From the NCBI RefSeq assembly GCF_000143415.4, contig NW_003314261.1, positions 5,110,360 to 5,174,359 of the forward strand: DNA of 64,000 nt. The letters run 5' to 3'. The position numbers and the translations under genes are program-made. A model generated the notes under the pieces. The model did no database searches. It saw only the letters and a list, made by a program, of their open reading frames with translations, and was not told the DNA's origin. Origin of the DNA: Selaginella moellendorffii. Its lineage: Eukaryota > Plantae > Lycopodiophyta. Positions 52,650-53,542 of this stretch are shown here, piece by piece; within the stretch, counting starts at the first letter, position 1; each line of letters begins with the position of its first letter.

Positions 52650-53542
52650 GAGCACCGACTTAAAGATATTTACCAGTGCACCCAGCACAAGGAAAATGCA
52701 ACTGCCAAAGATAATCACGCCCTGCAGAAGATTAATAATTCCTGAAGCTCACGAGATCAACTTTGATGAACTTAATTGGTGTCTATATTGGTGTTAAGTG
52801 ACACCAATTAAGTGACACTTACTTGATGTCACTTAATTGGTGTCTTAATTGGTGTCACAATAATCTCAAGGATGATAATCACCAGATAAAGGATTGACAC
52901 TTAGCAAAGGAACTTTGAGGACGAGGTCTGAGTCTCTTGGCTTTCACTAGAACCCGTCCCAATGCACGTTCTGGTGGTGAGTAGAGAATGTGATGTTATG
53001 GTAGCAAAAATAGAGCCACAAGCCAAGCCAAAGGACCTTGTCTTCAAAGTTCCTTTGCTAAGTGTCATCTTTTATCCTAAATTTAAGCATAAATATGATC
53101 CTCATTTAATGAGATTAGTGATGTCATGATGTGATGGGAAAATATACTTTGAGATGTTTTCAAAAATGGCTCTGCTTAAGCATGCCCAAATCTGAGAATC
53201 ACACTCTTAAACTTACATAGTAGTTATTCTGATTCAGTTTCATTCTTACCTTCATAACCCATGTGGAAACCCTTTGCCCAGCCTATGACCCAAGAATCAG
53301 ATGCTAAGACTTTCAGTGACCATTCTGTCAACTAGATCCAGTCTGATGCTGATGAAGTTTCATTTGTAGGTAGTACCTCCTGTAGAGTGCCTTGCAAGAA
53401 GATTTAAAAGTAATTAACAACAAAACTTTAGACAGCAAGTTTGCCATACCAAAGATGTCTCCACCATGGCTGACACATGAAAAAAACTCGCAAGGAGGAG
53501 GCATGCAAGTGAAAGAATGAACATCATACTTGATTTTGCCAT
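52650..53542 (-). pseudogene. Orphan secreted protein family, copy E (rearranged, contains an inverted duplication)
   Basis: Exon 1 and start of exon 2 at 53330-53542; 3' part at 52650-52930; insertion with inverted arm between. Confidence 0.75.
52885..53076. ncRNA. Inverted-repeat fold-back derived from the secreted-protein CDS (candidate MIRNA/hpRNA 2)
   Basis: 52885-52928 pairs with 53034-53076 (about 43 bp, three G:U, one bulge); extra stems within the loop. Confidence 0.55.

What the first reader, a model, noticed from the sequence alone, without database searches (positions are those of the whole stretch)
52885..53076. Pseudogene turned hairpin: miRNA-like fold-back complementary to its neighbouring paralogs
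Seen: within copy E the segment coding DLVLKVPLLCVILY occurs in both orientations (52885-52928 / 53034-53076) around a ~105-nt loop with extra stems (CTTGGCTT/AAGCCAAG; CACTAGAAC/GTTCTGGTG). All three substitutions between arms are G:U-compatible on the + strand. The + strand 5' arm (AGCAAAGGAACTTTGAGGACGAGGTC) is perfectly antisense to B and D mRNA and one mismatch from F. Established: young plant MIRNA genes arise by inverted duplication of target sequence. Inference: a self-contained array with its own small-RNA repressor. The G:U bias could also reflect C>T deamination.
Basis: partly seen in the sequence, partly recalled or inferred. Interest (0 to 1): 0.8.

Follow-up and report, generated by a model that had tools for sequence, protein, structure and literature searches.

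The report
Gene-derived hairpin, candidate young spikemoss microRNA
In the spikemoss Selaginella moellendorffii, a 44-base piece of a species-specific gene was copied back-to-front, making an RNA hairpin (six copies found) that could yield a microRNA against that gene family, a known way plant microRNAs are born, but no RNA from the hairpin itself was seen.

Summary
The fold-back is real: 43 bp stem, 105-nt loop, z = -11.5; all three arm substitutions are G:U on +; the 5' arm matches B and D exactly and F with one mismatch. The genome is Selaginella moellendorffii (GL377565.1). The antisense arm is almost invariant in all five distinct copies, and the stem changes more slowly than loop and flank, but only modestly (p = 0.016 to 0.07). 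There is no covariation, and two copies have a broken partner arm. A U-start 21-mer sits 16-17 nt above the stem base and scores 0-4 against the family. No RNA read covered the hairpin; small-RNA and degradome data were out of reach. The only family mRNA seen comes from another scaffold, so 'self-contained array' is unsupported. Verdict: a target-derived proto- or young MIRNA locus (about 45% functional, 40% inert), a new member of a known kind.

The parts
52885..52928 (+). 5' arm of hairpin E; antisense to the DLVLKVPLL codons of the gene family; candidate guide arm
52901..52922 (+). Predicted (not observed) 21-nt guide registers starting with U at 52901 or 52902, 16-17 nt above the stem base, fully paired
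   Evidence: lower-stem rule in PMC3787264
52929..53033 (+). 105-nt loop with two short inner stems; 52929-53019 shows no detectable homology to the gene; 53021-53033 is an extension of the duplicated gene piece
53034..53077 (+). 3' arm: sense copy of the gene segment with three C>T changes; predicted star 53042-53063
52630..52884 (-). Decayed 3' half of gene copy E (micro-deletions, local palindrome 52794-52861), continuous with the 5' arm
53078..53325 (.). 3' flank shared by the hairpin copies; no significant gene homology
53326..53542 (-). Decayed 5' half of gene copy E (signal-peptide exon, intron, start of exon 2)
45152..45333 (+). Second hairpin (hp2), 80.7% identical to hairpin E over 275 nt; same 25-nt antisense core; two G:G mismatches low in the stem
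42728..43330 (-). Gene B, intact, two exons, 181 aa signal-peptide-like start plus hydrophobic body; perfect site at 43022-43042
46415..47017 (-). Gene D, intact; perfect site at 46709-46729
54596..55216 (-). Gene F (SELMODRAFT_402881); 1-nt loss after the ancestral ATG and a 13-nt gap at the start of exon 2; site at 54905-54925 with one mismatch
41630..42172 (-). Copy A: frameshifted, 3'-truncated, with a 15-nt deletion that removes the target site
45587..45889 (-). Copy C: 5' half only, truncated at the target site and joined to the hp2 flank
52060..52430 (+). Fragment of a different, convergent gene upstream of the hairpin; its homologue upstream of two sister hairpins is transcribed in the hairpin-forming direction

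Best explanation
A young, target-derived MIRNA locus. SHOWN: a piece of at least 57 nt of exon 2 of a S. moellendorffii-specific hydrophobic-protein gene was duplicated in inverted orientation, and the unit was then copied to six places on two scaffolds. INFERRED: a + strand Pol II transcript, probably read through from the convergent gene fragment upstream and so antisense to the gene remnant, folds into the 43-bp stem. DCL1 cuts about 15-17 nt above the base and releases a 21-mer starting with U at 52901 or 52902. AGO1 uses it to slice family mRNAs at the KVPLL codons (for the 52902 guide, between 43031/43032 in B and 46718/46719 in D), including the copies on other scaffolds. Expression would be weak or tissue-restricted, and the family is in birth-and-death turnover (two of five distinct copies broken).
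For: Very stable fold, better on +. All three ancestral arm differences and a fourth in copy L1a are C>T in the 3' arm, giving G:U on +, while the 5' core keeps the target sequence. The 25-nt core varies at 1 site in five copies, a G:U to A:U change. Stem 9 changes in 81 sites versus 39 in 158 outside, p = 0.016. The G:U pairs persist in the copies, so arm-to-arm conversion is not what keeps the stem. The upper part of the duplicated piece has diverged while the 44-nt core has not. A U-start guide fits the lower-stem geometry; the 52902 guide scores 0-2.5 against all nine full-length close copies tested. The targets are real genes: dN < dS in most pairs, spliced mRNA at depth about 420 in run X1. 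The flank upstream of sister hairpins L1b/L1c is transcribed on the hairpin-forming strand. A 157-nt contig identical to 52535-52691 is in X1. The species has DCL1 and degradome-validated miRNA cleavage (PMC5569507).
Against: No read or contig on 52805-54253 in four runs. The stem-conservation signal drops to p = 0.07 when the rewritten loop segment is excluded, and an 18-nt loop block is also invariant. No compensatory change. L1b lost 10 nt of the 3' arm, L1c is cut by an inversion, hp2 has two G:G mismatches. The target site is no more conserved among intact genes than other windows (241 of 422 windows are as invariant). The guide is not significantly closer to the genes than the other remnant DNA in the best-kept copies. 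No match among the miRNA candidates of You et al. 2017. The upstream transcript is not seen to reach the hairpin.
Confidence: 0.45

Rival explanations
1. An inert scar. A template-switch inverted duplication arose in a rearrangement-prone tandem array and was copied passively with the repeat unit. It is not transcribed, or its product has no effect, and it is decaying.
For: No hairpin RNA. Other micro-inversions arose beside and inside it (palindrome 52794-52861; a new inverted repeat in the L1b/L1c loop; kilobase inversions on GL377573.1). The duplication is young, about 3-10% from the genes, so complementarity is expected without selection. Two of five copies are broken. The G:U bias has a chance probability of 1/8 to 1/16. 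[quoted passage not shown]
Against: The stem changes at about half the rate of loop and flank. All 3'-arm damage spares the antisense arm. The three stranded runs also lack the target mRNA, so they are probably the wrong tissue; pri-miRNAs are hard to see in RNA-seq (PMC5569507).
Confidence: 0.4
2. A hairpin-siRNA or natural-antisense locus. The + strand transcript (about 250 nt antisense to the gene plus the near-perfect stem) is diced imprecisely into mixed 21-24-nt RNAs that dampen the family without one defined miRNA.
For: The duplex is fully paired, with no mismatch in any guide register tested. Near-perfect young foldbacks give heterogeneous siRNAs first (PMC1790633). Many registers from 52895 to 52911 score 0-4 on B and D.
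Against: The stem is only two duplexes long. DCL2 is absent and no phased siRNA clusters or 24-nt peak were found in this species' sampled tissue (PMC5569507).
Confidence: 0.1
3. The effect is at DNA level only. The repeated 44-nt segment or its cruciform is a recombination hotspot that reshapes the array, and conversion with paralogues keeps the 5' arm gene-like.
For: Several breakpoints sit at the target segment: the deletion in A, the truncation of C, the edge of the 2.7-kb duplication at 41871/45587, the internal duplication on GL377573.1, the L1b deletion and the L1c break.
Against: Conversion does not explain why the 3' arm, which keeps its own T variants, is about as conserved between copies. 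This reading can be true alongside the others.
Confidence: 0.05

Closest known systems
Young plant MIRNA genes born by target-gene inverted duplication (Allen et al. 2004 model; MIR163 and 16 Arabidopsis loci in PMC1790633; TID-miRNAs in 10.1101/2021.07.25.453727; Aha-miR217 in 10.1101/2024.07.25.605110)
   Same: Both arms are copies of target coding sequence; similarity to the gene extends beyond the duplex; near-perfect sites in a lineage-specific gene family; birth-and-death among copies.
   Different: Those loci have sequenced small RNAs; this one has none yet. The targets are an orphan lycophyte family.
MIR444 and MIR824, MEPIDAS model (10.1101/682591)
   Same: Partial inverted duplication inside the gene, with the hairpin forming on the strand antisense to the gene; a convergent transcript upstream could supply antisense transcription.
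   Different: There the host target gene stayed functional at birth and the miRNA is validated and conserved. Here the host copy is a pseudogene and antisense transcription across the hairpin is not shown.
Annotated S. moellendorffii species-specific miRNAs (smo-miR1080 to miR1115, e.g. the multi-copy MIR1094)
   Same: Same species and size class; an earlier scan note (s1-432147, unchecked) describes MIR1094 as a multi-copy hairpin built from about 42 nt of its kinase targets.
   Different: No arm sequence occurs among the candidates in You et al. 2017, which include only 25 of the 64 miRBase entries as genome-mapped matches; no Rfam match.

Membership tests
Plant MIRNA locus (Axtell and Meyers criteria, 10.1101/213314) | Hairpin precursor, compact foldback | tested here: met
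   193-nt foldback, z -11.5, MFEI 1.07; the stem survives in a 600-nt fold
Plant MIRNA locus (Axtell and Meyers criteria, 10.1101/213314) | At most five mismatches in the miRNA/miRNA* duplex, at most three in asymmetric bulges | tested here: met
   0 unpaired bases in predicted duplexes starting 52900-52903; criterion
Plant MIRNA locus (Axtell and Meyers criteria, 10.1101/213314) | miRNA and miRNA* both seen by small-RNA sequencing | not testable with these tools
   No run identified as a small-RNA library was offered; published lists checked were negative but partial
Plant MIRNA locus (Axtell and Meyers criteria, 10.1101/213314) | Precision of at least 75%, replicated in two libraries | not testable with these tools
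   Needs small-RNA reads
Plant MIRNA locus (Axtell and Meyers criteria, 10.1101/213314) | Single-stranded precursor transcript across the hairpin | tested here: inconclusive
   No coverage in four runs; low-level RNA upstream; three of the runs also lack the target mRNA
Target-gene inverted-duplication (proto-)MIRNA | Both arms homologous to one segment of a protein-coding gene, in opposite orientations | tested here: met
Target-gene inverted-duplication (proto-)MIRNA | Complementary sites in intact members of the donor family | tested here: met
   Guide 52902 scores 0-2.5 on nine full-length close copies; 7 on P0005's locus, 10-11 on copy A and the distant paralogue
Target-gene inverted-duplication (proto-)MIRNA | Cleavage of donor-family mRNA | not testable with these tools
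Target-gene inverted-duplication (proto-)MIRNA | Duplex conserved while the rest of the foldback drifts | tested here: inconclusive
   p = 0.016, or 0.07 conservatively; no covariation; two copies broken
MEPIDAS-type natural-antisense MIRNA (MIR444/MIR824) | Antisense transcription of the donor locus | tested here: inconclusive
   Hairpin-strand reads match the upstream flank of L1b/L1c but stop before the gene remnant
Known Rfam RNA family | Match at gathering score | tested here: not met
   only sub-threshold hits; the miR-430 hit (31.4 versus 47.3 bits) is on the neighbouring palindrome
Annotated smo-miR family (miRBase/PmiREN) | Mature sequence identical to a catalogued entry | tested here: inconclusive
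   Absent from You et al. 2017 supplements (two files cut when stored) and from searched full texts; the databases and Axtell 2007 / Banks 2011 were not available
MITE- or LTR-derived hairpin | Arms are transposon ends, dispersed at high copy | tested here: not met
   Arms are gene exon sequence; loop and flank occur only in the hairpin copies within the DNA held

The most novel reading that the evidence does not exclude
An unannotated, functional, multi-copy lycophyte miRNA family born inside the array of an orphan gene family and driven by read-through from a captured convergent gene. It would silence family members on several scaffolds. With live, drifting and broken hairpin copies and a site-deleted gene copy side by side, it would be a complete birth-to-death series in which both regulator and target are confined to one species.
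Probability: 0.3. Interest if true: 0.6.

Novelty: new member of a known kind. Interest (0 to 1): 0.4.

Why it matters
If active, it is a clean lycophyte example of MIRNA birth by partial inverted duplication, a route reported as fairly rare (4.2% of loci in 10.1101/2021.07.25.453727; two cases in A. halleri in 10.1101/2024.07.25.605110). Five diverged copies and about a dozen target genes would let one follow selection on guide, star and loop separately, and test the antisense-read-through route outside flowering plants. It would also be the first regulatory handle on an orphan hydrophobic protein family. If inactive, it is one of many gene-derived inverted repeats in this genome. Existing public small-RNA and degradome data can decide it cheaply.

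Tried and rejected
Rfam: no family. Paper and supplement searches for arm words: none. Axtell 2007 and Banks 2011 were not held. Minus-strand hairpin as the product: weaker fold, C:A mismatches and worse target scores; less likely. Strand-biased deamination: the flanks show the opposite trend. Loop or 3' flank as diverged gene sequence: not above shuffles. Covariation: none. Synonymous constraint at the target site: none. Identity of the target protein: no Pfam family; Atlas hits at or below 0.80; low-confidence model, pLDDT 53.5, giving generic helical-bundle matches with Z at most 10.7; the full HMMER search found only five clusters, all S. moellendorffii. The bacterial promoter scan is irrelevant here. 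A majority consensus of the intact plant genes was used inside scripts only as a ruler for divergence.

Full report
OBSERVATION. The + strand folds at -98 kcal/mol against a shuffle mean of -51.7 (z -11.5); the - strand at -87.7 (z -8.4). The stem has 43 pairs with G:U at 52891:53070, 52919:53043 and 52923:53039. The inner stems and the matches to B, D (exact) and F (one mismatch) are as stated. The neighbouring genes prove that the duplication is not chance.

SOURCE AND ARRAY. The proteins are S. moellendorffii hypothetical proteins. The window from 44596 to 64000 is identical to scaffold GL377565.1, which puts the hairpin at 5163244-5163436. The array genes lie on the - strand, have two exons with a GT-AG intron of 57-66 nt, and encode 181-182 aa with a signal-peptide-like start and a very hydrophobic body. 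B and D are intact. F has lost a base after the ancestral ATG. A is frameshifted and lacks 15 nt at the target site. C stops at the target site. E is split into two decayed halves around loop, inverted arm and flank. The family is under purifying selection (dN 0.04-0.07, dS 0.13-0.21 between deep copies). It has further members on GL377573.1, GL377584.1, GL377626.1 and a 59%-identical one on GL377598.1. It has no relative outside this species in the full HMMER search and no informative domain or fold.

THE HAIRPIN IS A FAMILY. A second copy sits at 45152-45333 (80.7% over 275 nt; z -8.3). A copy identical to it over 321 nt lies about 33 kb from hairpin E on the same scaffold, beyond the window. 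Three more lie on GL377573.1, whose unique flanks are 84-94% identical to the window; that scaffold is probably the other haplotype (inference). Of the five distinct copies, hairpin E and L1a are intact, hp2 has two G:G mismatches low in the stem, L1b lost 10 nt of the 3' arm, and L1c is cut in the 3' arm by an inversion. Loop and flank are shared, so the hairpin arose once and was then copied.

IS IT UNDER SELECTION? Suggestive, not proven. The 25-nt antisense core varies at one site in five copies, a G>A that turns G:U into A:U. Parsimony gives 9 changes in 81 stem sites against 39 in 158 other sites (p = 0.016). The value is 0.07 if the loop segment rewritten in L1b/L1c is left out. Against the genes, the three arm differences are all C>T in the 3' arm, and L1a adds a fourth. 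For a strand-symmetric process that has probability 1/8 to 1/16 (inference). The flanking remnants show 4 C>T and 8 G>A on +, so strand-biased deamination is not supported. Against selection: no compensatory pair, an equally invariant 18-nt block in the loop, no special conservation of the target site among the genes, and two broken copies. The duplication is young (remnants about 3-10% from the genes in the best-kept copies), so much of the complementarity is expected anyway.

PREDICTED PRODUCT (inference). Base-to-loop processing cuts about 15 nt above the stem base (PMC3787264). Registers 52901 and 52902 lie 16 and 17 nt above it, begin with U and are fully paired. The 52902 21-mer scores 0 on B, D and their close relatives, 2 on F and 2-2.5 on the GL377584.1 and GL377626.1 genes; copy A and the distant paralogue have no site. 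The species has DCL1 and miRNA-guided cleavage, and lacks DCL2 (PMC5569507).

EXPRESSION. The run search found no recorded RNA holder. Four runs were laid on 52000-56800 at 90% likeness. Nothing covered 52805-54253. In three stranded raw-read runs (about 12% of each read) the neighbouring LOG gene was covered but neither the hairpin nor any family gene was, so those tissues are uninformative. In X1 (contigs; RNA is a guess, but the contigs are spliced) a family mRNA had depth about 420. Its 30 listed variants all match the gene on GL377584.1 (SELMODRAFT_441800 type), not B, D or F. X1 also held a 157-nt contig identical to 52535-52691, about 195 nt upstream of the 5' arm, at depth 5, strand unknown. 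Low-depth reads laid at 52097-52245 carry the junction and the five listed variants of the flank upstream of L1b/L1c, and the X1 contig has the same count of nine differences. In the stranded runs these reads are in the hairpin-forming direction, but they do not reach the hairpin. That flank is a fragment of another gene that lies tail-to-tail with the hydrophobic gene and precedes the hairpin copies, a plausible source of a promoter (inference).

MECHANISM AND RIVALS. Best reading (0.45): a young MIRNA transcribed on +, diced by DCL1, slicing family mRNAs in cis and in trans. Shown: origin, structure, complementarity, real and expressed targets, copying of the unit. Inferred: transcription across the hairpin, dicing, loading, cleavage. 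Close rival (0.40): an inert template-switch scar in a region that keeps producing inversions; drift and death is described as perhaps the most common fate (PMC1790633). Minor rivals: imprecise hairpin siRNA (0.10) and a DNA-level hotspot (0.05), prompted by the many breakpoints at this segment.

COMPARISON AND NOVELTY. It is built like the inverted-duplication MIRNAs of Arabidopsis and, in orientation, like MIR444/MIR824 (10.1101/682591). It meets the structural criteria for a plant MIRNA, but the defining small-RNA criteria (10.1101/213314) could not be tested, so it should be filed as a candidate or proto-MIRNA, not as a MIRNA. No Rfam match and no match in the published lists I could reach; miRBase and PmiREN were not available, so 'unannotated' is provisional. 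Earlier scan notes list many similar gene-derived hairpins in this genome, some judged inert and one a known miRNA; these are unchecked and used only as a base rate. Class: new member of a known kind. Interest 0.4; 0.6 if the small RNA and cleavage are confirmed.

Noticed in passing
window 41630-42172, 45587, 41871; L001 17741, 20046-20056, 12644: Breakpoints cluster at the same short target segment: the 15-nt deletion in A, the truncation of C, the edge of the 2.7-kb duplication, an internal exon duplication, and the damage to L1b and L1c. Either a recombination hotspot or, for A, loss of the site.
   Followed up: partly
window 41871-44604 and 45587-48291: 2.7-kb tandem duplication (96.7%) carrying a half gene, a whole gene and a PAP-fibrillin fragment; a third copy lies beyond the window (L002 13307-16011, 99.3% to the second).
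   Followed up: partly
window 52746-52870: A recent cluster of short direct and inverted copies forming a second hairpin (-37.8 kcal/mol) just upstream of hairpin E; absent from the GL377573.1 copies.
   Followed up: partly
window 52326-52353, 54320-54410, 44961-45150, 54014-54170: Fragments of an unidentified + strand gene (motifs like PDDLDED and MHVQLRMP). An intact relative elsewhere is very highly expressed (contig depth about 2585 in X1). No Pfam hit on the fragments.
   Followed up: partly
L001 20005-20040 and 12680-12710: A new small inverted repeat has formed inside the loop of hairpins L1b and L1c.
   Followed up: no
window 48880-51213: Decayed copia-type retrotransposon (zinc knuckle, Pol beta-barrel, RVT_2) between D and hairpin E.
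   Followed up: no
window 57852-58655 (-): Stand-alone STAND-type NTPase ORF (nSTAND1 above cut-off), beside a LOG-type gene and a glutamate-carboxypeptidase-like gene.
   Followed up: no
L008 10001-10573 (GL377598.1): Divergent family member (59% identity) with no usable site for the predicted guide; a natural negative control and outgroup.
   Followed up: partly
window 1340-1577, 37642-38848, 39958-40145; L003 15000-15230; L006 8400-9570: Two families of AT-rich, palindromic, MITE-like repeats recur near the family genes on several scaffolds.
   Followed up: no
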